Assembly: GCF_000143415.4 (NCBI RefSeq)
Contig: NW_003314270.1
Location: forward strand, 2,349,048-2,413,047
DNA: 64,000 nt
Source of the DNA: Selaginella moellendorffii
Lineage: Eukaryota > Plantae > Lycopodiophyta
Direction: 5' to 3'
Position 1 is the stretch's first letter. Every line of letters starts with the position of its first letter. The position numbers and the translations under genes were made by a program. Under the pieces are notes generated by a model, which saw nothing but the letters and a program-made list of their open reading frames with translations, ran no database searches and was not told where the DNA came from. Shown in pieces: positions 16,998 through 64,000 of this stretch.

Positions 16998-18945
16998 ATG
17001 GCGGCTGCCAAGGAGCGAGGTCGCGCGCGCCTGGATTCGTCGCTCATGTCGCCAGCCCTCTCGCAGCGAGCTGGAATCGTCCAGATCGTGCGGGATCAGC
17101 TAAGCGCGAGCCCGGCACTGGGTAAGCATCTCGCCCCGCCAGGATGATTGATCCATCGCGCATTCTCAGATTTTCTAGGTCAAATGTAGGCTTCCTGTAG
17201 AGGATTGCACTCTCGATCAGGTGTTTGTGGCTGAAATCTTCGATAATTTCTTCCAGACAAGCACTACCATGCCTGGTCCCAGGAGACGATCGACAAGGTC
17301 GCCGAGAAGCGAGCGACGGAGATTTCTACGTTTTTGGATGCGCTGAGAAGCGCTCGCCAGGAGCTCCTAGACAACGAAGAGACGCCATTCTCATGGAAGG
17401 TAGTGTAATCACATCTTCGATTTTCCCTCTCTGATCGAAAGAAGGTTTATTTTGGTGGTTTTGTCAGATCAAGGAGGAAACGGATGTTATGCGTGTTATG
17501 TATCGGCCAGGCCCAGAAGGCATGCCATTCCACACTTATTGTGTTGAAGGCATTGTGAATGGACCCATGATGAATGGTAGGAAAAAAAAATTTCTCGGAT
17601 GGTTTTCTCAAGCTTTGGCCTTTTGGGATTTTTTTTTCTTTGTCGCAGCTATCTGTGTGGCTTGGGAAGCTCCAGCGTTTTATACATGGTATGTTGGAGC
17701 TTTGTTTCTGCGAGTTCCTCGTTGACGTCTAAACAGGTGGCCGCAGTTTAACATGCCGACGTTCAAAGTTGTGGAATCCAAATGCGTGAAGAGAATTCGC
17801 GTCGGCGAGGATCTGTGTCATATAAGGTATGCGGCTGCGTTGTGGTTTCAGTGTTAACTAAGTTCTCCAGAGTCAAGGTACCGTGGCCTCTGGCGCAACG
17901 GGAGGTTCTCATGACCGAGTTTGAGCTGGAGTACTTTGAGGACGACGTTGTGATTGTTACTTTTGGCACGGTATGCTCGAAGTCCCTGTGTTTCTGCTCT
18001 TAGCTGTTTGCAAAATCGACATGTGTGTAGGCTCCTTCAGATCCAGACGAAGGTGAAGAGGAGATTTATGGATTCTCTGCGGACGAATTACCCCCTGCCA
18101 CACAGGATGTCGTTCGCATGGAAATTTCAGGTGGATTTATGCTGCAAAAGATGACCAACGAGCAGAGCTTCTTCAGGTAGTTTGAAGCTTGTCGACGTTC
18201 TCCGTGTTTCCAGTTTCACCTCAGTGTTTCGCAGGACGTTGGTCAATATGGATATAAAGCTCGACTTTGTTCCACCTTGGGTGATCAACTTCATCACACG
18301 GCAGCTCGTTGGCAGTGGCTACAAACTTTATCAAAAGGTACGCGTTGCCTACAAGTTTGTGCTTTTCTAAACCACTCAGCGGTTTGTTCCCAGGCCGTGC
18401 TATCTGCAAGCCAGCATAAAGTCTTCCAAAAGCTCATGGCTTCGGAGCCTTTGTACCATCGCATCAAGGACGGCATGAAACGATCAGAGAAGAAGCAAAT
18501 GGAGACCAAGAGAATCACCGCTGACACTGCCACTGACAAAATCGAAGAAGTAAAGGAAGCAGCTTCGACATCACAAGAGCTGGTAGAGCGATTTCGTGCG
18601 GAGAAACTCCAAGCCCCCGACCGGCAAGAGGTCATCCACATCGACTCAGAGGTGGAGCGTGCATTGCAAGTTCTAGACAAGATCATCGAGCTCGTGGAGG
18701 ACATGAAGTCACAGACAGCGTCCTCGGAAGCGGCGACAGCATCGACGAGCGCATTAGAAAACGGCGACGTGGCGAAATCGTCACTGCTCAAGAACGCCAA
18801 GAAAAATCTCGCCAGTGACACTAGCTGCTTTGGCTCTGGAAGAAGGCCACTTCTCCAAGCAACGAGACAACAGACATCCAAGCTAGCGTTGCTCAAAGAT
18901 ATTTTAAGGGGAAAATATAAAGGGAGGGATGGGATTTCCCGTTAA
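16998..18945 (+). CDS. START/SRPBCC (Bet v1-like) lipid-transport superfamily protein
   Basis: Multi-exon: WKIKEETDVMRVMYRPGPEG.PFHT..VEG..NGP, WWPQF..PTFK, RVKVPWPLAQRE, GGFMLQK, MDIKLDFVPPWVINFITRQLVGSG, matching a conserved plant START-like family as recalled. Confidence 0.8.
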
Positions 18946-18976
18946 AATCTTTAAACTAGGGTTCTTCGGGTGAGCT

Positions 18977-19745
18977 TTGGCGGGAACGCGATGGGCCAGT
19001 AGAATGCGGGTATTACTGTGGATTATGGCGCAAGCGATGATCTGGGGGACGATTTTTTCAGGTCTTGGATTGCTGGGAAGCTCAGCGCGGCGACGGGGCT
19101 GGATCTTGCCGCCTCGGCCCTTGGCCAAGACCGGGAAGACTCTTCAAATTGTGAGTTCGTGGTTTCTTGCTTGCGGATGTGATTGATCGATGCGATGCGT
19201 CTTGTTGCAGCGATGGATTTGGACCTTGATGGAGGTTTCAACAAGCTAGCCTCGTTCAATAGATCTCGAGGCATTGACGCTGCGACGGAGAAGAATGCTG
19301 ACACAGGATCCAAAACTAAACAAGTGAGTTCTCTTTTTTCTCTTGTCTTTGCAAGCTCTAGGTTCTTGCACAGAAAGGATCCTCTAGTATCCTCGAGACA
19401 ACCTACATGTTGATCTCTCCGGCCTAGGAATGACAAGAGCGCTGACACAGGATCCAAAACTAAAAGAAGTGAGCTTTCTTTTCTCTTATCCTTGCAAGCT
19501 CTAAGTTCTTGCACAGAGAGGACCCGTTTTTTCTCCTGTATCGACGCAAGCTACCTGCTGATCTATCCGACCTAGGTTCTAGGAATGACAAGAGCGCTGA
19601 CACAGGATCCAAAACTAAAGAAGTGAGTTCTCTTTTTTTTTTTTTGCTTTAGAGGCTAGGCTCTAAGTTCTTGAGGATACAGTCTTCTCCAGTATCTTCT
19701 GCTCGAGATAAGCTTGTTGATACCAAGACATTAAAAAGTGAGTTT
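18977..19745 (+). pseudogene. Truncated, decayed copy of the At4g18490-like gene (exons 1-3 plus ~3 repeat exons)
   Basis: Reverse-complement homology to ~25700-26630. The exon-1 donor is deleted, the exon-2 acceptor is CAG>CAA, and no C-terminal exons are present. Confidence 0.8.
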
Positions 19746-19887: not shown

Positions 19888-20682
19888 ATGGTGCTGTGGG
19901 AGCTCACTCTGGCGACGGCGTACTTCCTTGGGCTCAAGCGCACCTATCGCCTGGCACTGAGGATCCAGAGAAAGGTCCTGCCCAAGAGCGGGCGCCTCCG
20001 GTGTTTCGCGCAGAGGTATGCTTGATCTCCCTTGATCCTTAAACCGTGTTCTTGCTGCTTGTCTTGAGCTAGTTTTGCTCCATAAGTCGAGAATGCTGGT
20101 CGGCATCTTTTTCTTTCCGTGCTCTTGTTCGAGAGTAGGATTTGTCTTTCCCCTTAGAGGAGCTACTTGTCATAGTTTTGCTCCATAAGTCGAGAGTACT
20201 GACCGACATCTTTTTCTTTTCAAGGCGGACGCGGTTTGCATTTGACACCGTCATCAAGATCCAGAAGAAGTTCGCAGCATGGGACATGTCTGCCGGCAAA
20301 CGGCTTGGTAACTGGATTCTGAGGAGATCTCCTGCCGCTCCACAAATCGGGAAAGATCCTCCTCTCGAGATCGAGAAAATGCCAACGCTTCCTCCCGTCC
20401 GAGCTATAGCGCCACCATCCTTCAATCCTCTCGGTAAGAGCTTCTTTCCCTCCTTTTTCTTAAAGAAATACAAACTTTTCGTTCGCAGGGAGCTTGAAGT
20501 CGAGCTGGAGGCCACTGAACAAGGACATCGAGAAATCCCAGAGACTTTACTCCGTGCTCCCGGGAGAAGTCTCGTACGAGAGGTCTCGTCTCAAGAGCAG
20601 CATCATCCGCGAAGACATCGCCATGTACGCAAACCTCCCGCTCAAGTACAGCAGCAACACGAGATCGAGCTGGACGGTTTGA
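19888..20682 (+). CDS. Small conserved plant protein of unknown function (MVLWE-x-TL family)
   Basis: 3 exons: MVLWELTLATAYFLGLKRTYRLALRIQR..|RTRFAFD..GKRLGNWILR..|..IIREDIAMY..*, matching a conserved uncharacterised land-plant protein as recalled. Confidence 0.8.
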
Positions 20683-21093
20683 TGGATTCCGTTTTTGCGT
20701 CGGTCAGAGTTCCGGTTTCCAGCGACGATTTTGTCCTCCTTTTGCCCTCTCCTTTGTCCCTGAGGTATGCATCGTTTTGGTTTCGATCAGCCGTCAAAAG
20801 TGACCATTTGGTTCTAACACGACTGAGAAGGAAAAGCTTCGAGTGTCATTTGCAGGAAGACTCTGAGAAACAGAGATTGTTCCATAGATAATGAAAAACG
20901 TCCCGGAGTCCCGTGTCAATCAAGAGATCTTCTCGGAGGTACTTCTTAGATCAAGCTTTTCAACACTCTGGCCTCCCATTTGTGCACTGTCGATAAGGCA
21001 GGGAATGGGCGGCCACTGTCCTAGAGCTACTGGGATATGGGATTTGACCAGGAAAGGGAGACGAAGAAGAAGAAGATAGATAAAAAAAATGGG

Positions 21094-21192
21094 TCTCTCT
21101 CTCTCTCGTCTCTCTCGTCTCTCGTCTCTCTCGTCTCTCTCGTCTCTCGTCTCTCTCGTCTCTCGTCTCTCTCGTCTCTCTCGTCTCTCGTC
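21094..21192. repeat. Compound microsatellite (TCTCTCG/TCTCTCTCG)n
   Basis: Directly visible. Confidence 0.95.
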
Positions 21193-21680
21193 TTGATCGA
21201 TGGAGACCACTTTATAAAGTTCCAGAGAGATGGGTCGCAGGTCATATAGCTACGGCGGGACCAGAGGCTCGTGTAGGCAGTCCTCGTCAATCTACAGAGA
21301 AAAAGAAGCAAAGCCATGGAGATTAGACGATATTGATATCTCTACATTGCGAAGAGCATCTTCCCGCAAGAGGACGACCCCAACAGATAGAATATAATAT
21401 GGGGAACAAGACAAGGCAGTTTGGGGGGGGTGTAAGGGATCGCGTGAAATCAGAGAAAGATGCCACAGGAGAAGAGGTCTCCCTCCATCGATCGATCCAG
21501 GCGCGCAAGTCAAGCTTCTTTCTTTTTCTCTCCCTCTCGCCCTTGAAATAAAGTTTTAAATCTCTTTTTTTTTCTGTACATATAACAGCAAAGGTGGCGG
21601 ACCAAGAAAATGAGCCAGAAAAGGAAAAAAGGTGGCGCAGCAAGATAAAGGAGAAAGAAAGAAAAAGAAAAGCTAAACAC

Positions 21681-22985
21681 TCAGTCGGACGATGAGAGCT
21701 GTGGAGACGAGGATGGATCGTCCGACGATGAGACACTGGACGGGGCGCGGCAAAAGAGCGCCCTCTGTTGCAAGTGCCTCATGCTCTGCTCCATGCTCAG
21801 CTGGACCATCTCCGACAGCATCTTCCTCGCGGTGATCTCCTCCTCCTCCTCGCCGCCGCCGCCGCCGCCAACCTCGCACTCCATGCCATCGATCGCTCCT
21901 CCTCCGCCGCCACCGCCGCCACCGCCGCCGCCAGCACTGGAGCTCCGCGCCGGCGACTCGCGCAGGAGCTCCAGCAGCGTGTGAGCCATCCGCTGCGCTC
22001 GCGGCGTGCCCTGCACCGTGAGCTCCAGCAGCCCCGGGATGGCCCCCTCGTCCAGGATCGCGTCGCGGTACGTGGATCGATCGCTCTGGCACAGCGCCAG
22101 CAGCGTCCCCACGGCGTGCTCGCGGCTCTTGCTGGATCCGTCCTCGAGCACCTCCACCAGCGTGAGGATCCCGCCCTCCACCTTGCCGATGGACGCCCGC
22201 GCGTCCTCGAAGGCGGACAGCGATTCCAGCAGCGAGGTGGCCTTGTCCGCGACGTTGCCCGATTTCTTGCAGCTCTTGAGGAGGAGGAGGAGTGGCGGCA
22301 CCGGGCGCGCGGCCAGGATTGGTGGGCGATTCTCCGGGAGCGTGGAGAGGTTGTAGAGCGCCATGACCGCGTCCACCTTGCCCTGGACGCTGCCCGAGGT
22401 GAGCATCTCCACCAGCAGCGGGATGGCGCCAGAGGAGCCGATGACGGGCTTGTTGCTCGGCGCGGCGGAGAGGGTGTAGAGCGCCGCGGCGGCGGATTCG
22501 CGCAGCGTGGAGCCGGTCTGGAGGAGGTCCACCAGCGGCGCCACTGCGCCCGACTTGACGATCTTCACCTTGTTCCTGGAAGAATTCGAGCGTGAGATAG
22601 CCTAGATACGAAGAACAAGGAAATCAATGCGAGGAACACGATACCTCTCATTCCCCACGGCGAGATTTAGGACCGCCAGGAGCGCCGCCTCCCTGGAATC
22701 GTGGCAGGAGGACTTGAGCATGAGAACCAGCGGCGGAATCACGCCCGCCGCCGCGAGGTAGACCCTCGTCTTGGCCGATGTCTTGGTGAGCCTGCGAATC
22801 TCTCTGGCGGCCCTCAATCTCACATCTCCTGCCCCAAACATGAAGGACCACACGATGTCCTGGATGTTCTGCTTGATCGATCCTCCCGCGCCGCCGCCCC
22901 CGGGCAGCATCGCCATTGGATTCTCGGGAGAGGGCTTGCCGAGCGTGAGTAGCTTGGAGCGCTCCATTCCCAGCTGGTAACGCAT
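21681..22985 (-). CDS. Armadillo-repeat protein (PUB-like ARM repeats, no U-box)
   Basis: Exons 22645-22985 (or start at 22967) and 21681-22575; AAREIRRLTK, AALLAVLNLAVGNERNKVKIVKSGAV.PLV, GKVDAVMALYNLS, REHAVGTLLALCQSDR, EGAIPGLLELTVQGT; poly-G/poly-E tail. Confidence 0.92.
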
Positions 22986-23849
22986 CTCTCGCCTCGAATC
23001 CCTGGCCTGCTACAAGCGATTCCTCGCCGTAATCTCGCGTTCTTGCCCTCTATCGCGCCGCCGGTCGTGATCCCCCACTCTACACCTGGAATTCATGGCT
23101 GCTCCTATCGATCCAGATGCCGCTACCGCGACCAAGCCCTACGCGAGACTCTCATCCTTCGATTCCTGCGGTTCCTAGAAGCTACCCGGAGCTAGATCTC
23201 TACTTCTTCCACTGTTCTTCCGGACAAGCTCCAAATTTCTCTATAGAACCTAACGAAGAATCCCTCTTCTTCTTCTTCTTCTTCGGGGCGAACGCCGGGG
23301 AGCGGGGAGACGCCGTACATCCCGCCACGTATATTCCTCAATCCAACGGTCACGGTGCCAAGAGGACGTGATCCGACGGCACCGCGCGACGGGAGATCGC
23401 TGCGGTTGGTGGGGGCGTCGGCGGAGCGATCGCCCGACCCAATTTCGCGCCATCTCTTTTGTATTTACATGGTTTGGCATTTATTAGAGATATAACATTA
23501 GTTTCAAATCAAACATTCCTTTTCCTTTCACTTTGTCTTTGTGAGGTTCTTTTTAAATTTTCGTGGGAAAGAAAGAAGCCCTAGTCCTTCCTACTGAAAG
23601 AGCTGTTCCATGGGCAACACGTTGCCACGTTGTAAGCAGTAGTTACATGCGTGCGATTCATGCAAATATACACAAGACTTGACAACCACCTAGAATATCA
23701 GATTTTTCCAGGCTTGATATTTTTGATAGCACGTCCTTCCAATACCCTACCAAAAATATAATCTTCTTAACCTTAACTCTCGAAACTTATTAAACTAAGT
23801 AACGCGATCAAACGTTTACGTTCATTGGAAAGTAAACAAACCAAGTACC

Positions 23850-26607
23850 TCAGACTTTAGAAGGTTCTCCCAGTAATTCATTCACAGAGCGCCTGAGAAG
23901 CTGGATGTGAAGAGAAATATAGTAAGGAAAGGAAGCAAGCTCTTTGAAACTGAGAAATGCAAGGATATTTTCTCGTCGTGCACGGGACTGTTGAGCAACA
24001 GCAGCTTGTTGTTTGCAACGATCGCCCTCACCAGAAGATCTGTGGCTTCCTCCTTCTTCTGCTTGAGCATCTTACACATCTAGAATGCGAAGGACATGAA
24101 AGGAGTTAACGTTAGGAGGTGAAACAAGCCCTTCACCTCCTCCAGAACTTCCGTGTAGCAGTCCACTTTGTCGACCACCTCGTTTTCAGGCTTCTCCAGC
24201 AGTGGAGGAGCAGGCTCCGGTCGCCACTCCATCTCTTGCGCCTGGAAAACTCTCCAAGATAAGTAGACTTCTTAGCAGGAACTACTTACAGCGATGGCCA
24301 GCGGGGGAAGAGCCTCCGGTCGCCACCCCATCTCTTGCGCCTGGAAAACTCTCCAAGGTAAGTAGACTTCTTTGCAGGAACGACTTACATCGATGGCCAG
24401 TGGGGGAGCAGGCTCCGGTCGCCACTCCATCTCTTGCACCTGGAAACTCTCCAAGATAAGTAGACTTCTTGCCAGGGACTACTTACATTGATGGCATCGA
24501 TGGCATCGATGGCAGGATTCTTCTCTCGAGCAGGAGGAGGTGATGAAGAATACTCGTCCACCGATCGTACCACATCTTTACCTTTGGATCCGTTGCTCTT
24601 CTCCTTTGCAGCATCAGAATGGTCCACCTCAAAGGAGTCCAGCTTATCTGCTGGAACCTAGGATGGAAAGAGATTAACATCGTTCTTTTCTCCTTCAAAA
24701 CAAACATACTCACATCTTTACTTGTGGATCCAGCGTCAGTGTTATTGTCATTCCTAGAATCCAGGCCGGAGAGGTCAACACGTAGCTTGTCTCGAGCAGC
24801 GGTTCGAGATACTGGAGAAGACTGTATCCTCAAGAACTTAGAGTTTGGCCTCAAGCAAAAAAAAAAAGACAACTCACATCTTTAGTTTTGGATCCGGTGT
24901 CAGCGTTCTTGTCATTCCTAGAATCCAGACCGGAGAGATCAGCACGCAGCTTGTCTCGAGCAGGCGTACGAGATACTGAAGAAGACTGTATCCTCAAGAA
25001 CTTAGAGCTTGGCTCAAGCAAAAAAAAAAGGAGCTTGGCTCAAGCAAACATAAAAGACAACTCACATCCTTAGTTTTGGATCCGGTGTCAGCGTTCTTGT
25101 CATTCCTAGAATCCAGGCCGGAGAGATCAACACGCAGCTTGTCTCGAGCAGGGGTACGAGATACTGGAGAAGACTGTATCCTCAAGAACTTAGAGCTTGG
25201 CCTCTCAAGCAAAAAACATAGAACTCACTTCTTTAGTTTTGGATCTAGTGTCAGCGTTCTTGTCATACCTAGAACCTAGGCCGGACAGATCAGCACGTAG
25301 CTTGCCTCTAGCAGGGAGACGAGATACTGGAGAAACAACGGGTCCTTTCTCCATCGACTATATCCTTCAAGAAGTTAGAGCCTGGCCTCTAAAGCAAAAT
25401 AAACAGGAGAACTCACTTCTTTAGTTTTGGATCCAGTGTCAGCGTTCTTGTCATTCCTAGAATCCAGACCGGAAATATCAACACGTAGCTTGTGTCGAGC
25501 AGGGGGGCGAGATGCTGGAGAAACAACAGCCATCGACTGTAACCTCAAGAACTTAGAGCTTGGTCTTTTAAGCAAAAACAAAAAAAGAACTCACGTCTTT
25601 AGTTTTGGATCCTCTGTCAGGGTTCTTGTCAGAATCCAGGCCGGAGATACGCAGCTTGTCTCGAGCAGGGGAACGAGATACCGGAGAAATCTCCATCGAC
25701 TGTATCCTCAAGAACTTAAAGCTTGGCCTCTAAACCAAAGAAAAAGAGAGAGAACTCACTTCTTTGGTTTTGGATCCAGTGTCAGCGTTCTTCTCATTCA
25801 TCGAATCCAGGCCGGAGAGATCAACGCGCAGCTTGTCTCGAGCAGGGGGGCGAGATACTGGAGAAATCTCCATCGACTGTATCCTCAAGAACTTAGAGCT
25901 TGCCTCTAAACCAGAACTCACTTCTTTAGTTTTGGATCCAGTCTCAGCGTTGTTGTCGGAGAGATCAGTGTCTCGAGCAGGGGGACGAGATACTGGAGAA
26001 ATATCCATCGACTGTATCCTAAAGAACTTGAGCCTCTAAACAAAAAAAAAGAGAAAAACTCACTTTGGATCCAGTGTCAGGGTTCTTGTCGGAGAGATCA
26101 ACGCGCAGCTTGTCTCGAGCAGGGGGACGACAAACTGGAGAAACCTCCATGGACTGTATCCTCAACTTAGAGCTTGGCCTTTAAACCGAGAACTCACTTC
26201 TTTAGTTTTGGATCCAGTGTCAGCGTTCTTCTCCATCGTAGCGTCAATGCCAGGGAGATCGAGATCGATATTAAACGAGGCTAGCTTGTTAAAACCTCCA
26301 TCAAGGTCCAAATCCATATCGCTGCAACAAGATTCATCGCATCGATCAATCACGTCCGCAAGCAAGAAACGATCAGAATCCATCCACTCACAATTTGGAG
26401 AGATCAAACGTCTTCCCGGTCTTGGCCATGGGCCGAGGCGGCGAGTCGTCAAGATCCAGCCCCGGCGCCGCGCCGAGCTTCCCAGGCTTCCAAGACGTGA
26501 GGAAATCGTCCCCCAAATCATCGCCTGCGCCATAATCCACAGTAAAACACCCGCATTCTACCGTCATCGAGAGAGATCTTACCGAAGCTCCCGGCCGCCT
26601 TCCCCAT
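23850..26607 (-). CDS. At4g18490-like uncharacterised protein, copy A (18 exons, 600 aa) with tandem repeat exons
   Basis: The N-terminus [37 protein letters not shown] and C-terminus [38 protein letters not shown] match the At4g18490 family as recalled. Exons: 26583-26607, 26392-26524, 26198-26321, 26064-26153, 25922-26011, 25760-25876, 25595-25699, 25417-25536, 25229-25357, 25066-25173, 24878-24985, 24714-24821, 24487-24657, 24389-24439, 24290-24340, 24137-24241, 23969-24079, 23850-23906; total 1803 nt, open. Confidence 0.85.
23907..23968 (-). other. U12-type (minor spliceosome) AT-AC intron
   Basis: 5' splice site ATATCCTT, branch TTCCTTAC ~13 nt before 3' splice site ..TTCAC; removal gives in-frame HDEK|[18 protein letters not shown]. 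Confidence 0.88.
24202..24486. repeat. Tandem ~99-bp intron+exon repeat (3 units; xQEMxWRPExxPPL)
   Basis: Directly visible; 51-nt phase-0 exons. Confidence 0.9.
24714..26197. repeat. Tandem ~135-190-bp intron+exon repeat (9 units; [33 protein letters not shown])
   Basis: Each unit on the - strand is a GTGAGT..YAG intron (usually with CTAAG and GATACAG) plus a phase-0 exon. Confidence 0.92.
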
Positions 26608-26649
26608 CGCCTTCCCGCCAAAGCCCACCCAGAGAACCCTAGTTTAAAC

Positions 26650-27021
26650 ATTTTCCTCTTAAATTGTCTTGTCACTGGAGAGAGTTTTTCTGGCGCTCTT
26701 GGGCAGTGTCGATTTTTCTACCTCGCCGTTTCCTACTTCGCTCGTGGATGCTGAAGCAGCCGAGACCGCTGAGGGAAATGGATCCGAGGACGCTGTCTGT
26801 GACTTTTTAAGTTCTCCACGAGCTCGATGATCCTGTCGAGAACTTGCAATGCACGCTCCACCTCTGAGTCGATGTGGATGACCTCTGGGGCTTGGAGTTT
26901 CTCGGCACTAAATCGCTCTACCAGCTCGAAGCTCCTTCCTTTACTTCTTCGAATTTGCGAGTGGCAGTGTCACCGGTGATTCTCTTCATCTTCATTTGCT
27001 TCCTTGATGCGATGGTACAAG
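26650..27021 (-). pseudogene. Decayed fragment of the START-like gene last exon
   Basis: Reverse complement of ~18451-18915 with several deletions (e.g. TCCTTGATGCGATGGTACAA; GAACTTGCAATGCACGCTCCACCTCTGAGTCGATGTGGATGACCTC). Confidence 0.88.
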
Positions 27022-30000
27022 TTTGAGTTTCTTAAATTTTTCTTGAATGATCGTAGGCCGGTGGAACTTCACTTGAAATTGCTTGTGAATGTTCCACTTT
27101 CTGACAGAGAAAAATAAATTGACTGCTCAAGCTGGGTAACATAAATTCTAGCATTATTCAAACTAAAAAGCATTAACAAAAACTCATATAAACTGTATAT
27201 TGTTTAATATGCAATTTTGAGGATGTTCTTATTGGCCAATTACTGTTGGGTAGTATCCAAATACTAATATTCAATAAGCACATGAGGAGATAATTAATTT
27301 AATATACTTCTTTACAAACTACATTTGAATATTAAATTCTATCATCTAAGAAGGAATTCCCACTATGCTACCCTCTCACCACTGCATTGATTGTAAGCAG
27401 TTTTTGTTATACTGGGATGCAATTTAACTTTGGAAATACATATAAAATAGAGGGAGTCTCAATATCAAAGGATGACATGATCATTTATGGGCAAATGGAA
27501 TGTGCTTGGGAAATATTGGGCATAATAGAGAAAGGAAGTTGTTGTGAGATAGGAGGCTAAGTATTGTTATAAAATCAAAGAGCTTGTGCAGTTATGGGGT
27601 GTAAACTATTTAATCTATAATTCTCTCTTTGTAATATTTAGGTAGCACTTGCCATGGGTCTCTCTACAAACAAACCATCTAAAGAAGTTCTTGATCATGA
27701 TCTAATGCATTTTCATTTTCATTTTGACTCATGCTAAATTATTATCTATTACTGTTCTAAAGTTCCTACTTTAGGCTATCAACCATCCTCTTGCACTAGT
27801 TTCTTAGACAAGGAAGATATAAAAGAAGTTGATACACCTATCCAAATCACTCTATAAAGTGTTATTATTCCTAATTCAAGATCACACAACTTGTTGAAGA
27901 TCATCCATGTTTCATAATGGACGTCCACCATTTGTAAAGGATTTTAAAGATCCCAACTTTATCAGCTAGTATGCTTGCAAAACCAAAGTGAGCTTAATAA
28001 AAGGAAGTTTTGGAGTACCTAAAGCAAATATAAATATCCAATAACATCTAATGGCTTGTTGAATTTGACCCATACTTGGAACAACCATAGAATCTAGCAT
28101 GGAAACAACTTACTTTGTACTAGATATACAATATCACACTTCATCTTATGTAGTGCTACACTCTTAAACAATTGTTTTGGGCATAACTACTATAAATGGC
28201 TTCAAAATTGAATCAACAAGATGTTATATTATTTTGTATAACTCTTACAATACAAATTGTGACACACATCATATGCATCACAACGTTTGAGCAGTGACCA
28301 ACTTTTACATTGCTCCATAGAGTCCTTAATACCAAATAAATAAATATAACCCAAGCAAGAGATGAAGATAAGTTTTTAATGCTAGGTGGGAAAGGAGGGA
28401 TTACCTTGATAAAGTATCAAATAGTGCATAACTAACTGCTCCTAGAGCTTGTCATGTTGTGCCATCTTGAAAATAAAAGAAAGCACTGGGGAGAAAAAAG
28501 AGTAAATTAAAGATTCTATACCTTGCTTGCCTTAATTCAGTTTGTCTTAAATTATAAAGTTAGTTTGTTGCATTGACTTCTCATAAGCCAGCACCAATAT
28601 CCATGCACTAGTACCAAATATAATTATAATTAACAATCCCTTATCTAAAGTATATGCATTCTAAAGACAGTTGCAAGTGCTAAGATGATGTGGATCATCA
28701 GCACTTAAAACAATCTCAACCTGATCTTGAATGTGAATTTCTTTAGACTCTAGCCAATTTGCATTTGAGAGTGAGAAGATTGAGGAGGTACCAGTCAACA
28801 AGACTTTTTTTCCCATTGAGACCTTTATATGCCATGTTTTTTATTTGAATACTATCATGTATAAAATCATAGTTATAAAGACAAACTAAAAATAATGAAG
28901 TTTGAGCCTTAGATCCACTTAACTTTGATAGGCATAAAGCTTGATACTTTTCGTTTAAATAGGAATTGGGTGGTTGCTCTTGTTTCTACTAACTGATATA
29001 TTTGCCTCCCATTGATCATTAAACTTCATGCACAATTATTTTATAATCCTGTAAAATTCTTAATGTTAAAATTAAAAACAAAAAACAAAAAAAATATCAA
29101 AGGTATTATCAAAACTCACTTATGTTCTCACTCCTTTAACTTTAACAAATCTTGAGGAATATGTGGTAGTATAGCATGGACACCCTTTTTACATCCATAG
29201 ACTTTATACCAATTCCAAACTTAAATATATTGTCCTTGTCTTGTAGCAAGTTTTGGTATAAGAACCTTTGAAAAGTTATGAAGATCTAGAGGATTAGTTG
29301 GATCAAAATATTGCTCAAACTCCAACGTCTAGAGAAAATGCTAATAAAACTATTTGAAACACTCACATTTCTATCATTTATAAAATGGGAAAAAAGTCAT
29401 ATAAAATTGTGGATAATGGGAAGAACTTACTTAATTACATATGAAAGGTCCTTGAATGAATGAATTTCTACTTCAAACCTCATACAATATTTATGTTTTC
29501 CTTGATATAGTTATAAAATTTGGCAAAGTCATCTTTAATAGTCTTATTGTTGAAGTGTAAAGGTTGTAGATAATATCCTCTCATATATTAGTGCACAAAA
29601 TAATAATAATTATATAGTGGAATACCCATCTATTATTGCATGAACCCATAGGTTTTATTGTGTTAATTTACACCAACCTAGAGGAATAAAAAAAAGTGTG
29701 TTAGAATTCAAGTATTTAGAAGAATCTGTTATGTGTCACATATATATAGGGGCTGTAATATTGTACAATTGGTAATCTATCACCTATAGGAAACATCTTC
29801 CATAGCCTTTTAGGTTGACAAAGATAAATGTCTCATAGTCTTTCTTGGTGAAGACTTTAAAACAAACTTATTAATGATTTATACATATTCTAGACTCTAA
29901 TGGGATCAGCTCTTGAAGCTTTGCTACAATTTGTTGTGAACATAAACTTTATGCCAACCAAATTGGTGCAATGTCTAGAAGTATTATTGGGTGGTGCCTA

Positions 30001-32535
30001 ATGCATGGCTTATTTGCTTTAAATTGCAATCACAAAGAAGATAATGTCAAACAAACTTCACTATCATATCTTTTTTATGATTCTAATTCGTTCCAAATTG
30101 CAAATAAAGGAATATCTATCTTGTCCTCATTGTTGATCTCTACACTACTAGTGCTATTTACTATCATAAGTGCTATTCTCACTATTAGTTACAATCTACA
30201 ATTGCTAGAACTGGTATGGACATTATCTTTCATACAACAATTTATACATAACAATAAAAGTGATCCTTATTAGTTGCCCCAACAATCAAGTAGAACCCTA
30301 ATGGAGCCAACTCTGTTACATTGACAAAGCCCTAGTAACCAATGATTGCCATGGTGCCAACATTCTGAAGGCCTAATTTGTAAAGAAATAAGAATATGTA
30401 AAAGTAGAAAAGGGACTAGCTCAAGCATATTATTTATAAGGTGAAACCTTGAGCCACTTTATGGACTTTTTTTTGGAGATATTATGTATTATTTGATTCA
30501 CACAGCTTTTTATAATGGTAATATTATGCAAATTGAATTTAAACAACTTATTGAACATTTTAAGATAGATTTTCAAGATGAAAAAGCTTTTATCAAGTAT
30601 TTTAAGATGACTAGAAGGAGAAAGTTGGTAAGTAAATCATTATTTTAACATGTAATTATTTTATTTGACAAATAAATCTGATAAGGTGTTCCATACCAAT
30701 ATAAAAGCTAGTCTTTAGTTGGAGAAAAAGTATACTCACAATCAAAGGATAGATTATACAGTTTACCAATTTAATACCAAGTTTATGAGAAGTATTGCTT
30801 TACTAGTTATTATAAAGATCATGGTTTTATTCAAAATTATAAATATAAAAAAATAATTGTACTGTAATTCTTAAAACAAAAACTGTTAACAACTCTCAAG
30901 TAAAATTCAACAAGGAAAATACTTATAAATTTATGTACAATCCTCTTCAAATCTAGCTATATGATATCTTATAATAAGATATGAAGAACATAGTGATTAA
31001 GCTTCTTTGACTTCTACAATACAGGACTATTTTTGTGTTTGGCAACATCAAGTTTATAAAGCTGCTCATGAAAGATTATGTTAATTTACAATAATGTATA
31101 GATAAGAAATTTACTAGATATGGTGAAATTATTTAGATTTACTTAATTATTAGTTGGTCAAGGAATTCTTTCCAATAGCAAGTATCTTGGATTTGTTAAT
31201 TTATATGTGGTGAACTTTTCTAAAAAGTTTATTAATTTTTCAAATTCTATTGGAAATAGTTTTATATTATAATTATATATAGGATTTATTTTCATAGTGA
31301 TTTGATGCACCCAAGAATATTATTAAGGGTTTTAGCATGTAACTCACTTTAAAAGGAAAGTTATTGCTACACAACTTTACACTAAGTACTAAGGTTACAC
31401 TAGATTTACCAATACTTTTAGAACTATATTAAACAAGCCAAACTAATTTATCCATACTAATTTAAATGACATAATGATAATTTAGGGTATCTAAAAGAAA
31501 TAATATATTTTATAGCCAATTATATGTAAATATGTTTTCTCATATAAAACAAAATAGAACTCTAGGTGTGAGTGCATGGAATATGGAAAAGAAATACAGA
31601 AAATGTACGTATCAATTAGCCCAAAAACCCTAACTTATATACAAAAGCAAGTGGTTTGAATTGAAACCAACCCGATGGCTACCAAAATTCCACTATATTA
31701 ATATTAATATATGGCATCGTAGCTATACACTTGGACCTGACATCATCCCCTCTATTTGAAATAATGGAATACTATCAAGGTTCTCTTGTAGATGGGCCGG
31801 GATCTGAAGGAACATTAGAAGGAGGCATCAGTGGATTTGTAGGTGGTATTAGCTATTCTTGATCCCTTTGTACAAAGCATTTCAACCACTACACATTTAT
31901 AATTTTTGAAGGATTGGTCTATTGGATGTCATATCGAACCTCATAAAATTGTGGTTTAACTTGCCACAACACCCGATACAGTCAAGGAGCCCCTTAGATA
32001 AACCACATACACCAAGTCATCCACTTTGTACTCCGCAGGTGGACAATGATGAGAGTTGTAACGCCATTGTTGTCCCACTTGTATATGGCCTAAGTGTTCA
32101 GTAGACTCTGCTCGGACAAGTGAAAGAATGCTTGTCAAATACTGATCCCATGACCTAGCATCGGCAGTTCGTGGCAATTGCGAAAGTAAACCCAACTTTG
32201 TTGGTAATATTGGATTATGACCATATAGAAGTTTATATGGTGAAGCATCAACAGAACTTTGCACCCTTGTGACATATGCATACCGAAGAGATGGCAAATA
32301 ACCATCTCAATCTGAATGCTGAAAGTTCATGTACTTTATGATCATCCCTTTGAACATCCGAACAAGCCATTCCATAAAACCGTTTGATTATGAATGATAA
32401 GCACTCGTGAAAGTGTAGCGTATCCCCAACTAAGACATCAAAACATGAAATGCCTCAACCATAAATGTGGAACCATTATCCAAAACTGTTTTGGACAAGA
32501 ATGTTAGAACACCACTCAATTGAGGAAGAAGTATA

Positions 32536-51860: not shown

Positions 51861-52019
51861 TCTGGCGGCCCTCCTGTCCCAAACATGAACCTCCTGGATG
51901 TTCTGATTGATCGATCCTCCCGTGCCACCGCCCCCGGGCAGCATCGCCATTGGATTCTCGGGAGAGGGCTTGCCGAGCGTGAGTAGCTTGGAGTGCTCCA
52001 TTCCCAGCTGGTAACGCAT
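51861..52019 (-). pseudogene. 5' fragment of the ARM-repeat gene at the duplication breakpoint
   Basis: Matches 22803-22985 with small deletions, then runs into unrelated AT-rich DNA. Confidence 0.88.
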
Positions 52020-52888
52020 CTCTCGCCTCGAATCCGTGGCCTGCTACAAGCAATTCCTCGCCGTAATCTCGCGTTCTTGCCCTCTATCGCGCCGCCGGTC
52101 GTGATCCCCCACTCTACACCTAGAATTCATGGCTGCTCCTATCGATCCAGATGCCGCTACCGCGACCAAGCCCTACGCGAGACTCTCATCTTTCGATTCC
52201 TGCGGTTCCTAGAAGCTGCCCGGAGCTAGATCTCTACTTCTTCCACTGTTCTTCCGGACACGCTCCAAATTTCTCTATAGAACCTAACGAAGAATCCCTC
52301 TTCTTCTTCTTCTTCTTCTTCGCAGCGAACGCCGGGGAGCGGGGAGACGCCGTACATCCCGCCACGTATATTCCTCAATCCAACGGTCACGGTACCAAGA
52401 GGGGTGATCCGACGGCGCCGCGCGGCGGGAGATCGCTGCGGTTGGTGGGGGCGTCGGCGGAGCGATCGCCCGACCCAATTTCGCGCCATCTCTTTTGTAT
52501 TTACATGGTTTGGCATTTATTAGAGATATAACATTAGTTTCAAATCAAACATTCCTTTTCCTTTCACTTTGTCTTTGTGAGGTTCTTTTTAAATTTTCGT
52601 GGGAAAGAAAGAAGCCCTAGTCCTTCCTACTGAAAGAGCTGTTCCATGGGCAACACGTTGCCACGTTGTAAGCAGTAGTTACATGCGTGCGATTCATGCA
52701 AATATACACAAGACTTGACAACCACCTAGAATATCAGATTTTTCCAGGCTTGATATTTTTTATAGCACGTCCTTCCAATACCATACCAAAAATATAATCT
52801 TCTTGACCTTAACTCTCGAAACTTATTAAACTAAGTAACGCGATCAAACGTTTACGTTTGACGTTGGAAAGTAAACAAACCAAGTACC

Positions 52889-55351
52889 TCAGACTTTAGA
52901 AGGTTCTGCCAGTAATTCATTCACAGAGCGCCTGAGAAGCTGGATGTGAAGAGAAATGTAGTATGGAAAGGAAGCAAGCTCTTTGAAACTGAGAAATGCA
53001 AGGATATTTTCTCGTCGTGCACAGGACTGTTGAGCAACAGCAGCTTGTTGTTTGCAACGATCGCCCTCACCAGAAGATCTGTGGCTTCCTCCTTCTTCTG
53101 CTTGAGCATCTTCCACATCTAGAATGCGAAGGACATGAAAGGAGTTAACGTTAGGAGGTGAAACAAGCCCTTCACCTCCTCCAGAACTTCCGTGTAGCAG
53201 TCCACTTTGTCGACCACCTCGTTTTCAGGCTTCTCCAGCAGTGGAGGAGCAGGCTCCGGTCGCCACTCCATCTCTTGCGCCTGGAAAACTCTCCAAGGTA
53301 AGTAGACTTCTTTGTAGGAACGACTTACATCGATGGCCAGCGGGGGAGCAGGCTCCGGTCGCCACTCCATCTCTTGCACCTGGAAACTCTCCAAGATAAG
53401 TAGACTTCTTGGCAGGAACTACTTACATTGATGGCATCGATGGCAGGATTGTTCTCTCGAGCAGGAGGAGGTGATGAAGAATACTCGTCCACCGATCGTA
53501 CCACATCTTTACCTTTGGATCCGTTGCTCTTCTCCTTTGCAGCATCAGAGTGGTCCACATCAAAGGAGTCCAGCTTATCTGCTGGAACCTAGGATGGAAA
53601 GAGATTAACATCGTTCTTTTCTCCTTCAAAACAAACATACTCACATCTTTACTTGTGGATCCAGCGTCAGTGTTATTGTCATTCCTAGAATCCAGGCCGG
53701 AGAGGTCAATACATAGCCTGTCTCGAGCAGCGGTTCGAGATACTGGAGAAGACTGTATCCTCAAGAACATAGAGTTTGGCCTCAAGCCAAAAAAAAAAGA
53801 CAACTCACATCTTTAGTTTTGGATCCGGTGTCAGCGTTCTTGTCATTCCTAGAATCCAGACCGGAGAGATCAACACGCAGCTTGTCTCGAGCAGGGGTAC
53901 GAGATACTGGAGAAGACTGTATCCTCAAGAACTTAGAGCTTGGCCTCTCAAGCAAAAAACATAGAACTCACTTCTTTAGTTTTGGATCTAGTGTCAGCGT
54001 TCTTGTCATACCTAGAACCTAGGCCGGACAGATCAGCACGTAGCTTGCCTCTAGCAGGGAGACGAGATACTGGAGAAACAACTGGTCCGTTCTCCATCGA
54101 CTATATCCTTCAAGAAGTTAGAGCCTGGCCTCTAAAGCAAAATAAACAGGAGAACTCACTTCTTTAGTTTTGGATCCAGTGTCAGCGTTCTTGTCATTCC
54201 TAGAATCCAGACCGGAAATATCAACACGTAGCTTGTGTCGAGCAGGCGGGCGAGATGCTGGAGAAACAACAGCCATCGACTGTAACCTCAAGAACTTAGA
54301 GCTTGGTCTTTTAAGCAAAAACAAAAAAAGAACTCACGTCTTTAGTTTTGGATCCTGTGTCAGGGTTCTTGTCAGAATCCAGGCCGGAGATACGCAGCTT
54401 GTCTCGAGCAGGGGAACGAGATACCGGAGAAATCTCCATCGACTATATCCTCAAGAACTTAAAGCTTGGCCTCTAATCCAAAAAAAAGGAGAGAGAACTC
54501 ACTTCTTTGGTTTTGGATCCAGTGTCAGCGTTCTTCTCATTCATCGAATCCAGGTCGGAGAGATCAACGCGCAGCTTGTCTCGAGCAGGGGGGCGAGATA
54601 CTGGAGAAATCTCCATCGACTGTATCCTCAAGAACTTAGAGCTTGCCTCTAAACCAGAACTCACTTCTTTAGTTTTGGATCCAGTCTCAGCGTTGTTGTC
54701 GGAGAGATCAGTGTCTCGAGCAGGGGGACGAGATACTGGAGAAATATCCATCGACTGTATCCTAAAGAACTTGAGCCTCTAAACAAAAAAAAGAGAGAAA
54801 AACTCACTTTGGATCCAGTGTCAAGGTTCTTGTCGGAGAGATCAACGCGCAGCTTTTCTCGAGCAGGGGGACGACATAGTGGAGAAACCTCCATGGACTG
54901 TATCCTCAACTTAGAGCTTGGCCTTTAAACCGAGAACTCACTTCTTTAGTTTTGGATCCAGTGTCAGCGTTCTTCTCCATCGTAGCGTCAATGCCAGGGA
55001 GATCGAGATCGATATTAAACGAGGCTAGCTTGTTAAAACCTCCATCAAGGTCCAAATCCATATCGCTGCAACAAGATTCATCGCATCGATCAATCACGTC
55101 CGCAAGCAAGAAACGATCAGAATCCATCCACTCACAATTTGGAGAGATCAAACGTCTTCCCGGTCTTGGCCATGGGCCGAGGCGGCGAGTCGTCAAGATC
55201 CAGCCCCGGCGCCGCGCCGAGCTTCCCAGGCTTCCAAGACGTGAGGAAATCGTCCCCCAAATCATCGCCTGCGCCATAATCCACAGTAAAACACCCGCAT
55301 TCTACCGTCATCGAGAGAGATCTTACCGAAGCTCCCGGCCGCCTTCCCCAT
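52889..55351 (-). CDS. At4g18490-like protein, copy B (16 exons, ~544 aa)
   Basis: Same structure as copy A minus one 108-nt and one 51-nt repeat exon and a 9-nt AID unit; U12 branch TTCCATAC; MCK>MWK. Confidence 0.75.
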
Positions 55352-55394
55352 CGCCTTCCCGCCAAAGCCCACCCAGAGAACCCTAGTTTAAACA

Positions 55395-55763
55395 TTTTCC
55401 TCTTAAATTGTCTTGTCACTGGAGAGAGTTTTTCTGGCGCTCTTGGGCAGTGTCGATTTTTCTACCTCGCCGCTTCCTACTTCGCTCGTGGATGCTGAAG
55501 CAGCCGAGACCGCTGAGGGAAATGGATCCGAGGACGCTGTCTGTGACTTTTTAAGTTCTCCACGAGCTCGATGATCCTGTCGAGAACTTGCAATGCACGC
55601 TCCACCTCTGAGTCGATGTGGATGACCTCTGGGGCTTGGAGTTTCTCGGCACTAAATCGCTCTACCAGCTCGAAGCTCCTTCCTTTACTTCTTCGAATTT
55701 GCGAGTGGCAGTGTCACCGGTGATTCTCTTCATCTTCATTTGCTTCCTTGATGCGATGGTACA
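55395..55763 (-). pseudogene. Decayed START-like last-exon fragment, copy B
   Basis: Near-identical to 26650-27021. Confidence 0.85.
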
Positions 55764-63739: not shown

Positions 63740-64000
63740 TATGAGTGCATGGAATATGAAAGGAAATATAGAAAATGTGCATATCAATTAGCCCAAAAAC
63801 CTTAACTTATATACAAAAAAGCAAGTGGCCTGGATTGAAACCAATCCAATGGCTACCAAAATTGCACTATACTAATATTAATATATGCCATTATAGCTGT
63901 ACACTTGGACCTCATATCATCCCCTCCTCTTGGAATAGTGGAAGGCCATTAAGATTCTCTTGTAGATGGGCCAGAATCTAGAGGAACGTTAAGAGGAGGC
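63740..64000 (-). mobile_element. Duplicated 3' LTR (63740-63916) and PPT of element 1 in copy B
   Basis: Homologous to 31567-31826 with the same CTCTAGG left flank. Confidence 0.85.

What the first reader, a model, noticed from the sequence alone, without database searches (positions are those of the whole stretch)
23850..26607. Gene built from tandem arrays of frame-symmetric cassette exons (At4g18490-like): a copy-number-variable linker
What looks like a non-coding ~160-bp satellite is, on the minus strand, nine intron+exon units. Seen in sequence: the exons are 90, 90, 117, 105, 120, 129, 108, 108 and 108 nt. All are multiples of 3, stop-free and phase 0 despite many internal indels, while the introns vary freely in length. 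A second array of 51-nt phase-0 exons follows. Both arrays sit between conserved N- and C-terminal domains. The frame-preserving indels point to selection for coding. Most long units carry SP-x-x-R and some TP-x-R, which are proline-directed/CDK-type sites (established consensus). Inference: exon skipping and unequal crossover could tune linker length and phosphosite number in an uncharacterised conserved plant protein.
Basis: partly seen in the sequence, partly recalled or inferred. Interest (0 to 1): 0.8.

Follow-up and report, generated by a model that had tools for sequence, protein, structure and literature searches.

The report
Repeated exon cassettes in spikemoss gene
An intact spikemoss gene, probably the counterpart of the meiotic chromosome-pairing protein SCEP3 (Arabidopsis At4g18490), builds its floppy middle part from tandem exon-plus-intron units. 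The number of units differs between two near-identical gene copies 29 kb apart, so this is a clean example of a known way of making protein repeats, not a new kind of system.

Summary
On the minus strand, 23850-26607 holds an 18-exon, 600-codon gene of Selaginella moellendorffii (SELMODRAFT_440171). Nine tandem intron+exon units have exons of 90, 90, 117, 105, 120, 129, 108, 108 and 108 nt. Three units with 51-nt exons follow. All array exons are phase 0.

Evidence that the array is coding:
- All 8 exon indel events among the units are multiples of 3, while intron lengths are not constrained.
- Third codon positions vary twice as much as first and second positions.
- A decayed third copy in the same window (18990-19740, +) has only frame-breaking indels.
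- RefSeq's independent model of a second copy (52889-55351) uses exactly these junctions.

The two full copies differ in length only by one whole A unit, one whole B unit and a 9-bp repeat. This shows unit gain or loss directly.

At4g18490 is no longer uncharacterised: it is SCEP3, a central-element protein of the synaptonemal complex (2025 papers). Membership is likely but unproven here. The architecture fits and one language-model search points to it, but no sequence search reached a non-Selaginella relative.

Exon skipping and phosphosite tuning are untested. The last intron looks like an unannotated AT-AC (U12-type) intron. The scan noted similar cassette look-alikes elsewhere in this genome.

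The parts
23850..26607 (-). Gene copy 1 (SELMODRAFT_440171): 18-exon model, 600 codons, ATG at 26607, stop ending at 23850
   Evidence: The database model P0002 is 100% identical over exons 1-5 and 10-17.
26198..26607 (-). Exons 1-3 (26583-26607, 26392-26524, 26198-26321). They encode the acidic, Phe-containing N-terminal block. The last ~60 nt of exon 3 are already homologous to the 3' part of an A unit.
   Evidence: There are no differences from copy 2 in these 94 codons.
24714..26197 (-). Array A: nine tandem units of 134-188 bp, each a 44-80-nt GT-AG intron followed by a phase-0 exon. The exons are 26064-26153, 25922-26011, 25760-25876, 25595-25699, 25417-25536, 25229-25357, 25066-25173, 24878-24985 and 24714-24821.
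24487..24657 (-). Exon 13 (171 nt). Its first half is an older, diverged copy of the A-unit module. It contains a 9-bp tandem (A-I-D codons) that is one copy shorter in gene copy 2.
24191..24486 (-). Array B: three units of 98-99 bp, each a 47-48-nt intron plus a 51-nt phase-0 exon. The exons are 24389-24439, 24290-24340 and the first 51 nt of exon 16.
   Evidence: (period 99, 3.0 copies, 88% matches).
23969..24241 (-). Exon 16 (24137-24241) and exon 17 (23969-24079). They encode the only region predicted to be helical.
   Evidence: In the AlphaFold2 model of the copy-2 protein, the only helices apart from one in the read-through tail are at residues 476-496 and 498-518.
23907..23968 (-). Putative AT-AC (U12-type) last intron, 62 nt. 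It starts ATATCCTT, has the branch-like site TTCCTTAC with its A 16 nt before the 3' end, and ends AC. Both database models read through it.
   Evidence: The compound pattern is unique in the window and was found in 0 of 100 shuffles.
23850..23906 (-). Exon 18 (57 nt): 18 codons plus the stop. It is reached only if the AT-AC intron is spliced.
26671..27053 (-). Frame-shifted remnant of the 3' part of a START-domain gene, lying just upstream of the gene. It was carried along by the duplication and probably holds the promoter.
   Evidence: tblastn of P0008; sequence read.
52889..55351 (-). Gene copy 2 (LOC9631081 / SELMODRAFT_440172): same structure with 8 A units and 2 B units, 545 codons under the same model.
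18990..19740 (+). Copy 3: an older, decayed partial copy (exons 1-3 plus three A-like units) directly downstream of an intact START-domain gene.

Best explanation
The locus 23850-26607 (minus strand) is an intact protein-coding gene of Selaginella moellendorffii.

The protein has three parts: a short acidic, phenylalanine-containing N-terminal block, a long disordered middle, and a short helical C-terminus.

The middle was built at the DNA level by tandem duplication of whole intron+exon units. There are nine A units (30-43 aa each) and three B units (17 aa each). Older copies of the A module lie in exon 3 and exon 13, on either side of array A.

Every array exon has a length divisible by 3 and starts in phase 0. 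In-register unequal recombination between units therefore adds or removes a module without breaking the frame.

Shown here: the structure; the frame constraint; the loss or gain of exactly one unit in each array between two copies.

Inferred:
- The gene is the spikemoss member of the SCEP3/At4g18490 family, which encodes a central-element protein of the synaptonemal complex. I put this at about 0.65-0.7.
- The helical C-terminus would then mediate self-association and ZYP1 binding, and the arrays would form the poorly constrained linker.
- Selection keeps the frame and the splice sites, but constrains module sequence and module number only weakly.
- The last intron is a U12-type AT-AC intron, so the true C-terminus differs from both database models.
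For: Structure.

Frame constraint:
- Eight exon indel events among the A units are all multiples of 3. Intron lengths modulo 3 are mixed.
- Diversity by codon position is 0.102, 0.084 and 0.192.

Internal control: in the decayed copy 3, exon-equivalent indels are 38, 8, 8, 2, 2 and 7 nt, and A-like exon lengths are 95, 106 and 55 nt. The START-gene remnant upstream of copy 1 is also frame-shifted.

Independent gene model: XP_024528568.1 equals the copy-2 translation spliced at the same junctions for 527 of 527 residues.

Unit lability: copy 1 and copy 2 are about 98.8% identical. Within the gene their only length differences are 188 bp (an 80-nt intron plus a 108-nt exon), 99 bp (a 48-nt intron plus a 51-nt exon) and 9 bp. 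The JGI protein from the other scaffold (P0005) shows a third combination.

SCEP3 link:
- The Atlas feature search ranks the cluster 'putative uncharacterized protein At4g18490 isoform X1' second, at 0.89 with 195/256 features shared.
- In the AlphaFold2 model, residues 1-440 have pLDDT below 50. Apart from one helix in the read-through tail, the only helices are at 476-518.
- This matches the published SCEP3 description: about 79% disordered, helices only at the C-terminus, and conservation only at the two ends.
- Feng et al. list a S. moellendorffii homologue.

AT-AC intron.
Against:
- No sequence search reached a relative outside Selaginella.
- The Atlas search with the N-terminal part alone gave no usable hit.
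- The motifs quoted for SCEP3 (FKLD, FKMD, FAFSYDF, FxF repeats) are not reproduced literally. Selaginella has only look-alikes (K-F-D-M-D, S-F-N-I-D, S-F-E-V-D) and no FxF.
- The published Selaginella accession (XP_024528147.1) is not the accession of copy 2 (XP_024528568.1), and I could not map it.
- Purifying selection on module sequence is weak and not significant.
- RefSeq seems to have no protein for copy 1 in the database searched.
- Copy 2 carries a substitution in the putative U12 branch site.
Confidence: 0.65

Rival explanations
1. The array is a non-coding satellite inside one large intron. Exon 3 is always spliced to exon 13, and the exon-like look is an accident of the repeat.
For: Short exons are easily stop-free; many are also open in a second frame. 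The 3' half of each 'intron' is as conserved as codon positions 1-2. A similar look-alike elsewhere in this genome was judged to be a decayed satellite (note s1-385127). No transcripts were seen.
Against: 8 of 8 exon indels are 3n, against mixed intron lengths. Third-position diversity is in excess. Donors and acceptors are consensus in all nine units, in both copies. The unconstrained copy 3 shows what decay looks like. Gnomon's model uses the cassettes.
Confidence: 0.07
2. The gene copies are recently duplicated, unexpressed or dying genes. The frames are intact only because too little time has passed.
For: Copies 1 and 2 differ by 13 nonsynonymous and 5 synonymous changes, so dN/dS is near 1. 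The putative U12 branch site is mutated in copy 2. No RefSeq protein for copy 1 was found.
Against: The units within one copy have diverged about 18% at synonymous sites, yet they kept the frame through 8 indels. Exons 1-3 are identical between the copies. Both copies keep all 17 (copy 1) or 15 (copy 2) splice-site pairs and have no stop codon. The older copy 3 decayed, as did the START-gene remnant upstream of copies 1 and 2, while this gene stayed whole in both full copies.
Confidence: 0.12
3. The gene is a lineage-specific disordered protein unrelated to SCEP3/At4g18490. The resemblance is only compositional.
For: All HMMER and word searches found Selaginella proteins only. The N-terminal Atlas query was blank. 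There are no FxF repeats and no FAFSYDF motif. The accessions do not match.
Against: An Atlas cluster named At4g18490 ranks second with 195/256 shared features, and all three top clusters are streptophyte. The tripartite architecture is the same. SCEP3 is reported to be conserved only at its ends and was detected in lycophytes only by PSI-BLAST, so a failure of single-pass searches is expected.
Confidence: 0.3
4. Copies 1 and 2 are not paralogues. They are the two haplotypes of one locus, placed in tandem by the assembler, so the unit-number difference is an allelic polymorphism.
For: Divergence is about 1.2%, in the range I recall for the two haplotypes of this assembly (own knowledge). Only one full-length model (P0005) was found on the other scaffold.
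Against: Adjacent duplicated blocks are only about 90% identical, and one is inverted. That looks like an older, rearranged segmental duplication. P0005 is a third distinct version.
Confidence: 0.3

Closest known systems
SCEP3 (At4g18490), synaptonemal complex central-element protein of plants (Feng et al. 2025, PMC12283363; second study PMC12711579)
   Same: Both are plant-only. Both have a short conserved acidic/Phe N-terminal block, a long disordered and poorly conserved middle rich in polar and charged residues, and helices only in the last ~70-80 residues. Both are multi-exon genes. A feature search points to this family.
   Different: The Selaginella protein is shorter (600 aa against 801-803 aa). 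It lacks literal FKLD, FKMD and FAFSYDF motifs and FxF repeats. Neither paper, as far as I read them, describes a linker made of tandem exon cassettes. Homology was not demonstrated here by any alignment.
Tandem exon duplication giving arrays of symmetric exons, e.g. the PEVK exons of titin or the nebulin repeats (own knowledge, not tested here)
   Same: The unit of duplication is exon plus intron. All exons have lengths divisible by 3 and the same phase. They encode a disordered or elastic spacer, so gain, loss or skipping of units keeps the frame.
   Different: In those animal cases differential splicing is documented. Here no transcript data exist. The introns are only 44-80 nt, and the array is small (9 + 3 units).
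SYP-4 (C. elegans) and SIX6OS1 (mammals), proposed structural counterparts of SCEP3
   Same: They are mostly disordered synaptonemal-complex central-region proteins with one coiled-coil end and short linear motifs at the other.
   Different: The domain order is inverted and there is no sequence relationship. The comparison applies only if the SCEP3 assignment holds.
The 120-bp exon+intron look-alike satellite elsewhere in this genome (scan note s1-385127)
   Same: Same genome, and a tandem unit that can be read as an exon+intron cassette.
   Different: That one was judged not to be maintained by selection. This one keeps the frame through 8 indels, sits inside a complete 18-exon reading frame, and has a decayed paralogue as a contrast.

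Membership tests
SCEP3 / At4g18490 family | Detectable sequence homology to the conserved N-terminal (~150 aa) and C-terminal (~80 aa) regions | tested here: inconclusive
   phmmer of exon 2 against 1.84 billion representatives found only the locus's own protein plus spurious repeat proteins. Word searches with the whole protein, residues 1-82 and residues 500-566 found Selaginella only. The Atlas feature search ranked an At4g18490-named cluster second at 0.89. The joined 600-aa model was not searched.
SCEP3 / At4g18490 family | N-terminal phenylalanine repeats (FxF), FKLD and FKMD sites, and the FAFSYDF motif (PMC12711579) | tested here: not met
   Literal motifs are absent from the translated exons 1-3. 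Only look-alikes are present (K-F-D-M-D, S-F-N-I-D; S-F-E-V-D in exon 13). Six Phe occur in the first 82 residues, and there is no FxF.
SCEP3 / At4g18490 family | Helices confined to the C-terminal ~70-80 residues, the rest disordered | tested here: met
   AlphaFold2 single-sequence model of P0006: pLDDT is below 50 for residues 1-440, with helices at 476-496 and 498-518. The model's third helix lies in the read-through tail and is not trusted.
SCEP3 / At4g18490 family | Named as the S. moellendorffii homologue in the published phylogeny | tested here: inconclusive
   The paper lists XP_024528147.1. Copy 2 is XP_024528568.1 and copy 1 is EFJ31340.1. The listed accession was not among the hits and could not be mapped.
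SCEP3 / At4g18490 family | Meiotic expression, localisation to the synaptonemal complex central region, ZYP1 binding | not testable with these tools
   This needs expression data, cytology or interaction assays.
Tandem exon-duplication array of symmetric cassette exons | The repeat unit is a whole intron plus a whole exon, with consensus splice sites in every unit | tested here: met
   GTGAGT donors and (C/T)AG acceptors in all nine A units, and GTAAGT with CAG in the B units, in both gene copies.
Tandem exon-duplication array of symmetric cassette exons | All exon lengths are divisible by 3 and share one phase, maintained against indels | tested here: met
   Lengths are 90, 90, 117, 105, 120, 129, 108, 108, 108 and 51, 51 (+51). 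All 8 of 8 exon indel events are 3n. The control copy 3 has 0 of 6.
Tandem exon-duplication array of symmetric cassette exons | Coding constraint on the substitutions | tested here: inconclusive
   Third-position diversity is twice that of positions 1 and 2 (my chi-square on 14, 11 and 25 minimal changes gives p about 0.04). pN/pS is 0.63, interval 0.36-1.12.
Tandem exon-duplication array of symmetric cassette exons | The exons are present in mature mRNA, with or without skipping isoforms | not testable with these tools
The only indirect support is that the Gnomon model uses the junctions.
U12-type AT-AC intron | 5' splice site ATATCCTT, a branch site like TCCTTAAC 10-20 nt before the 3' end, terminal AC, and in-frame joining | tested here: met
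   23907-23968 starts ATATCCTT, has TTCCTTAC with its A 16 nt before the end, ends AC, and joins the frame to 18 more codons plus a stop. The compound pattern was found in 0 of 100 shuffles. In copy 2 the branch site reads TCCATAC. Splicing itself was not observed.

The most novel reading that the evidence does not exclude
A synaptonemal-complex central-element gene (SCEP3 orthologue) has a disordered spacer encoded by arrays of symmetric exon cassettes. The arrays gain and lose units between near-identical copies or alleles. This would give a natural series of linker lengths and motif valencies, possibly widened by exon skipping, that affects synaptonemal complex assembly or crossover patterning in a lycophyte.
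Probability: 0.2. Interest if true: 0.6.

Novelty: new member of a known kind. Interest (0 to 1): 0.35.

Why it matters
If the SCEP3 assignment holds, this is the lycophyte version of a protein shown in 2025 to be needed for synapsis, crossover assurance and crossover interference in Arabidopsis. Both papers leave the role of its unconserved linker open. A linker made of countable modules, present in this genome in three versions with different module numbers, would allow tests of whether linker length or motif number matters.

For annotation, three points are concrete:
- The JGI model of this gene is mis-spliced.
- Both database models probably carry a wrong C-terminus, because an AT-AC intron was not recognised.
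- The window holds a second intact copy and a pseudogene copy.

As gene-structure evolution it is a textbook-clean case with a built-in decayed control, but it is not a new principle.

Tried and rejected
- Pfam on six single exons and on the whole database proteins gave nothing. One sub-threshold Lge1 hit (18 bits against a cut-off of 25) was ignored.
- phmmer of exon 2 against all representatives gave three non-Selaginella hits. They are cadherin-like, EGF-repeat and mucin-like repeat proteins that score by summing many stretches, so I rejected them.
- Three word-index searches (whole protein, residues 1-82, residues 500-566) returned Selaginella only. One search was a parameter slip and was corrected.
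- The Atlas search with the N-terminal 94 residues gave no usable hit.
The unit count of that copy is therefore known only from an unreliable JGI protein model.
- The supplement of Feng et al. holds the SCEP3 alignment only as an image.
- A full-text search for the locus names and accessions found only that paper.
- A search of the scan's own notes by sequence was blank.
- I considered the upstream alternative acceptors used by the JGI model (an extra ~10 aa, [10 protein letters not shown]). I rejected them because they would leave introns of 14-30 nt in most units.
- I considered the plus strand. Its long ORFs (e.g. 25427-25909) are antisense read-through of units whose lengths happen to be 3n. 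I did not scan the plus strand for splice signals; the case for the minus strand is its consensus splice sites, the continuity with the N- and C-terminal exons, and the RefSeq model.
- I considered a GT-AG alternative for the last intron (donor inside exon 17, CTG|GTGAGG, to the acceptor at CATCCAG). It is in frame but would delete the helix-forming part, so I rate it less likely than the AT-AC reading.
- The joined 600-aa model was not handed to any search or fold tool. Exons were searched by reference and database proteins were used instead.
- I did not run a metagenome scan, because plant single-copy genes are unlikely to be there.
Full report
**The observation**

Tandem Repeats Finder reports two arrays in the region. 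One has a period of about 164-188 bp over 24708-25957. The other has a period of 99 bp, three copies, over 24200-24495.

Read on the minus strand, each long unit ends in A-A-A-G-A-[A/T/C] followed by GTGAGT. Each exon is preceded by (A/T)TA(C/T)AG.

Taking those sites gives exons of 90, 90, 117, 105, 120, 129, 108, 108 and 108 nt. All are open in phase 0. The introns are 44, 52, 45, 60, 58, 59, 55, 80 and 56 nt.

Three units follow, each a 47-48-nt intron plus a 51-nt exon.

With three 5' exons and exons 13 and 16-18, the model has 18 exons, 1803 nt and 600 codons. It runs from the ATG at 26607 to a stop ending at 23850.

The non-array introns of the same gene are 56-70 nt. The array introns are therefore normal for this gene, and for this genome, which is known for short introns (own knowledge).

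**Is the array coding?**

Being stop-free says little for exons this short, because many are open in two frames. Four other lines of evidence are stronger.

- Aligning the nine units shows eight separate indel events inside the exon parts: +3, +9, -9, -9, -6, -18, -6 and -9 nt. All are multiples of 3. The intron parts carry indels of 1, 2, 3, 6 and about 26 nt and variable T runs, so intron lengths modulo 3 are mixed.
- Mean pairwise diversity by codon position is 0.102, 0.084 and 0.192. This is the pattern expected in the proposed frame.
- The window contains a natural control. An older partial copy on the plus strand (18990-19740, 70-79% identical) has exon-equivalent indels of 38, 8, 8, 2, 2 and 7 nt and a mutated acceptor. 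Its A-like exon equivalents are 95, 106 and 55 nt long and contain stops.
- An independent gene model agrees. RefSeq XP_024528568.1, the Gnomon model of the second copy, is identical over its first 527 residues to the translation of that copy spliced at exactly these junctions.

Substitution-level constraint on the modules is weak. pN/pS among units is 0.63, with a bootstrap interval of 0.36-1.12.

**Three copies in one window**

A phmmer search with exon 2 returned the database protein of this locus. It is P0002, also known as EFJ31340.1 or SELMODRAFT_440171. This fixes the genome as Selaginella moellendorffii, in agreement with scan note s1-418421.

P0002 is mis-spliced. It retains the 45-nt intron, uses an upstream acceptor for exon 7, translates exon 8 out of frame, skips exon 9, and reads through the last intron.

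A self-comparison shows that 22826-27139 is duplicated at 51871-55884. BLAST puts the blocks at 96-97% identity. The second gene copy lies at 52889-55351.

A global alignment of the two copies shows 19 mismatches in 1635 exon positions and 11 in 827 intron positions. Within the gene there are only three length differences:
- 188 bp, exactly one A unit (an 80-nt intron plus a 108-nt exon);
- 99 bp, exactly one B unit (a 48-nt intron plus a 51-nt exon);
- 9 bp, one A-I-D codon triplet in exon 13.

So one copy has 9 A units and 3 B units, and the other has 8 and 2. Both are intact, with all splice sites preserved.

A third full-length version on another scaffold (P0005, SELMODRAFT_405447) appears from its protein model to combine a single exon-10/11 unit, three B units and one A-I-D triplet. 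Its DNA could not be fetched.

The codon differences between copies 1 and 2 are 13 nonsynonymous and 5 synonymous. None falls in exons 1-3.

The older copy 3 sits about 50 nt downstream of an intact START-domain gene (16998-18946, plus strand). Copies 1 and 2 carry a frame-shifted remnant of that gene's 3' end just upstream of their ATG. The ancestral arrangement was therefore START gene followed by this gene. At the copy-3 locus the START gene stayed intact and this gene decayed. In copies 1 and 2 the START piece decayed and this gene stayed whole. This reciprocal pattern is good evidence that the gene is under selection.

**Origin of the modules**

The last third of exon 3, the A units and the first half of exon 13 align as one module...K-L-x-x-[V/I]-D-L...[E/D]-K-N-x-x-[T/N]-G-S-K-x-K-[E/D].

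The array is therefore a young expansion, carrying its intron with it, of a module that was already repeated in the protein. It multiplies part of the N-terminal block.

**What the gene is**

Pfam has nothing.

A literature search shows that At4g18490 is SCEP3, a central-element protein of the synaptonemal complex. It is needed for synapsis, crossover assurance and crossover interference. It is described as conserved in plants only at its N- and C-termini, about 79% disordered, and carrying C-terminal helices that bind ZYP1 and self-associate.

Is this gene a member of that family?

For:
- An Atlas feature search with P0006 puts a cluster named 'putative uncharacterized protein At4g18490 isoform X1' second, at 0.89 with 195 of 256 features shared. 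All three top clusters are streptophyte.
- An AlphaFold2 model is disordered for residues 1-440. Its helices are at 476-496 and 498-518, plus one in the read-through tail that I do not trust.
- Feng et al. report a S. moellendorffii homologue found by PSI-BLAST.

Against or open:
- Every sequence search found Selaginella proteins only.
- The N-terminal Atlas query was blank.
- The quoted motifs FKLD, FKMD, FAFSYDF and FxF are not literally present.
- The published accession (XP_024528147.1) differs from that of copy 2, and I could not place it.

I put membership at about 0.65-0.7. I did not hand the joined 600-aa model to any search; that step is left out.

**The last intron**

After exon 17 the sequence reads ATATCCTT. 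Then TTCCTTAC lies with its A 16 nt before a terminal AC. Splicing these sites joins the frame to 18 further codons and a stop.

The compound pattern occurs once in the window and in none of 100 shuffles.

Both database models read through it instead, into a hydrophobic T/F/S-rich tail.

I read it as an unannotated U12-type AT-AC intron. Copy 2 has TCCATAC at the branch site, which may weaken it.

**How it most likely works**

Shown:
- Units are whole intron+exon cassettes with symmetric phase-0 exons.
- Units are gained and lost in register between copies.

Inferred:
- Unequal recombination between units drives the changes.
- The protein tolerates them because the arrays encode a disordered linker.
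- Selection acts mainly on the frame and the splice sites.

These are exon skipping and tuning of CDK-type phosphosites. S-P-x-x-R occurs in 8 of 9 units, but the full [ST]-P-x-[KR] consensus occurs in only 3. Neither SCEP3 paper, in the passages I searched, reports phosphorylation of SCEP3.

**Comparison and novelty**

Tandem exon duplication that yields symmetric exon arrays in flexible spacers is well known; the titin PEVK exons are the classic case (own knowledge). The gene is annotated as hypothetical, and its probable family is now characterised.

What is new is local:
- the cassette make-up of this linker;
- its three versions in one genome;
- the pseudogene control;
- the corrected C-terminus.

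I class it as a new member of a known kind, of moderate interest.

The scan noted cassette look-alikes elsewhere in this genome (s1-388289, and s1-385127, which was judged decayed).

Noticed in passing
window 51871-55884 and 61276-64000, against 22826-27139 and 28985-31826; 27263-28463 against 57796-56465: A segmental duplication about 29 kb apart carries a second intact copy of the gene. The gene block is 96-97% identical by BLAST. The neighbouring blocks are only about 90% identical, and one is inverted. It could instead be two haplotypes stacked by the assembler.
   Followed up: partly
window 18990-19740 (+): A decayed partial third copy (exons 1-3 plus three A-like units) with frame-breaking indels and a lost acceptor. 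JGI's model on the other scaffold (SELMODRAFT_438663) fuses its equivalent to the START-domain gene.
   Followed up: yes
window 16998-18946 (+), 26671-27053 (-) and 55415-55797 (-): An intact START-domain gene ends about 50 nt before the ATG of copy 3. Frame-shifted remnants of its 3' end lie upstream of copies 1 and 2, so this gene's promoter probably lies inside the old START coding sequence.
   Followed up: partly
window 23907-23968 (-) and 52946-53007 (-): A putative AT-AC U12-type intron is missed by both the JGI and RefSeq models. Copy 2 has a T-to-A change in the branch-site motif and a second substitution 6 nt downstream.
   Followed up: partly
the last ~36 nt of each array-A intron, e.g. 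window 25877-25912 (-): The 3' half of the cassette introns is as conserved among units (diversity 0.093) as codon positions 1-2, and more conserved than third positions (0.192). It includes a CTCTAAG branch-like site about 20-26 nt before the AG. This could reflect constraint on very short introns, or gene conversion. Unexplained.
   Followed up: partly
window 25005-25056 (-): A 26-bp tandem duplication inside intron 10 makes it the longest cassette intron, at 80 nt.
   Followed up: no
window 19889-20680 (+): A small multi-exon gene follows copy 3. Its first exon is merged into JGI's fused START model (P0008). Not identified.
   Followed up: no
window 21093-21193: A TC-rich microsatellite with period 9/16/25, about 100 bp.
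   Followed up: no
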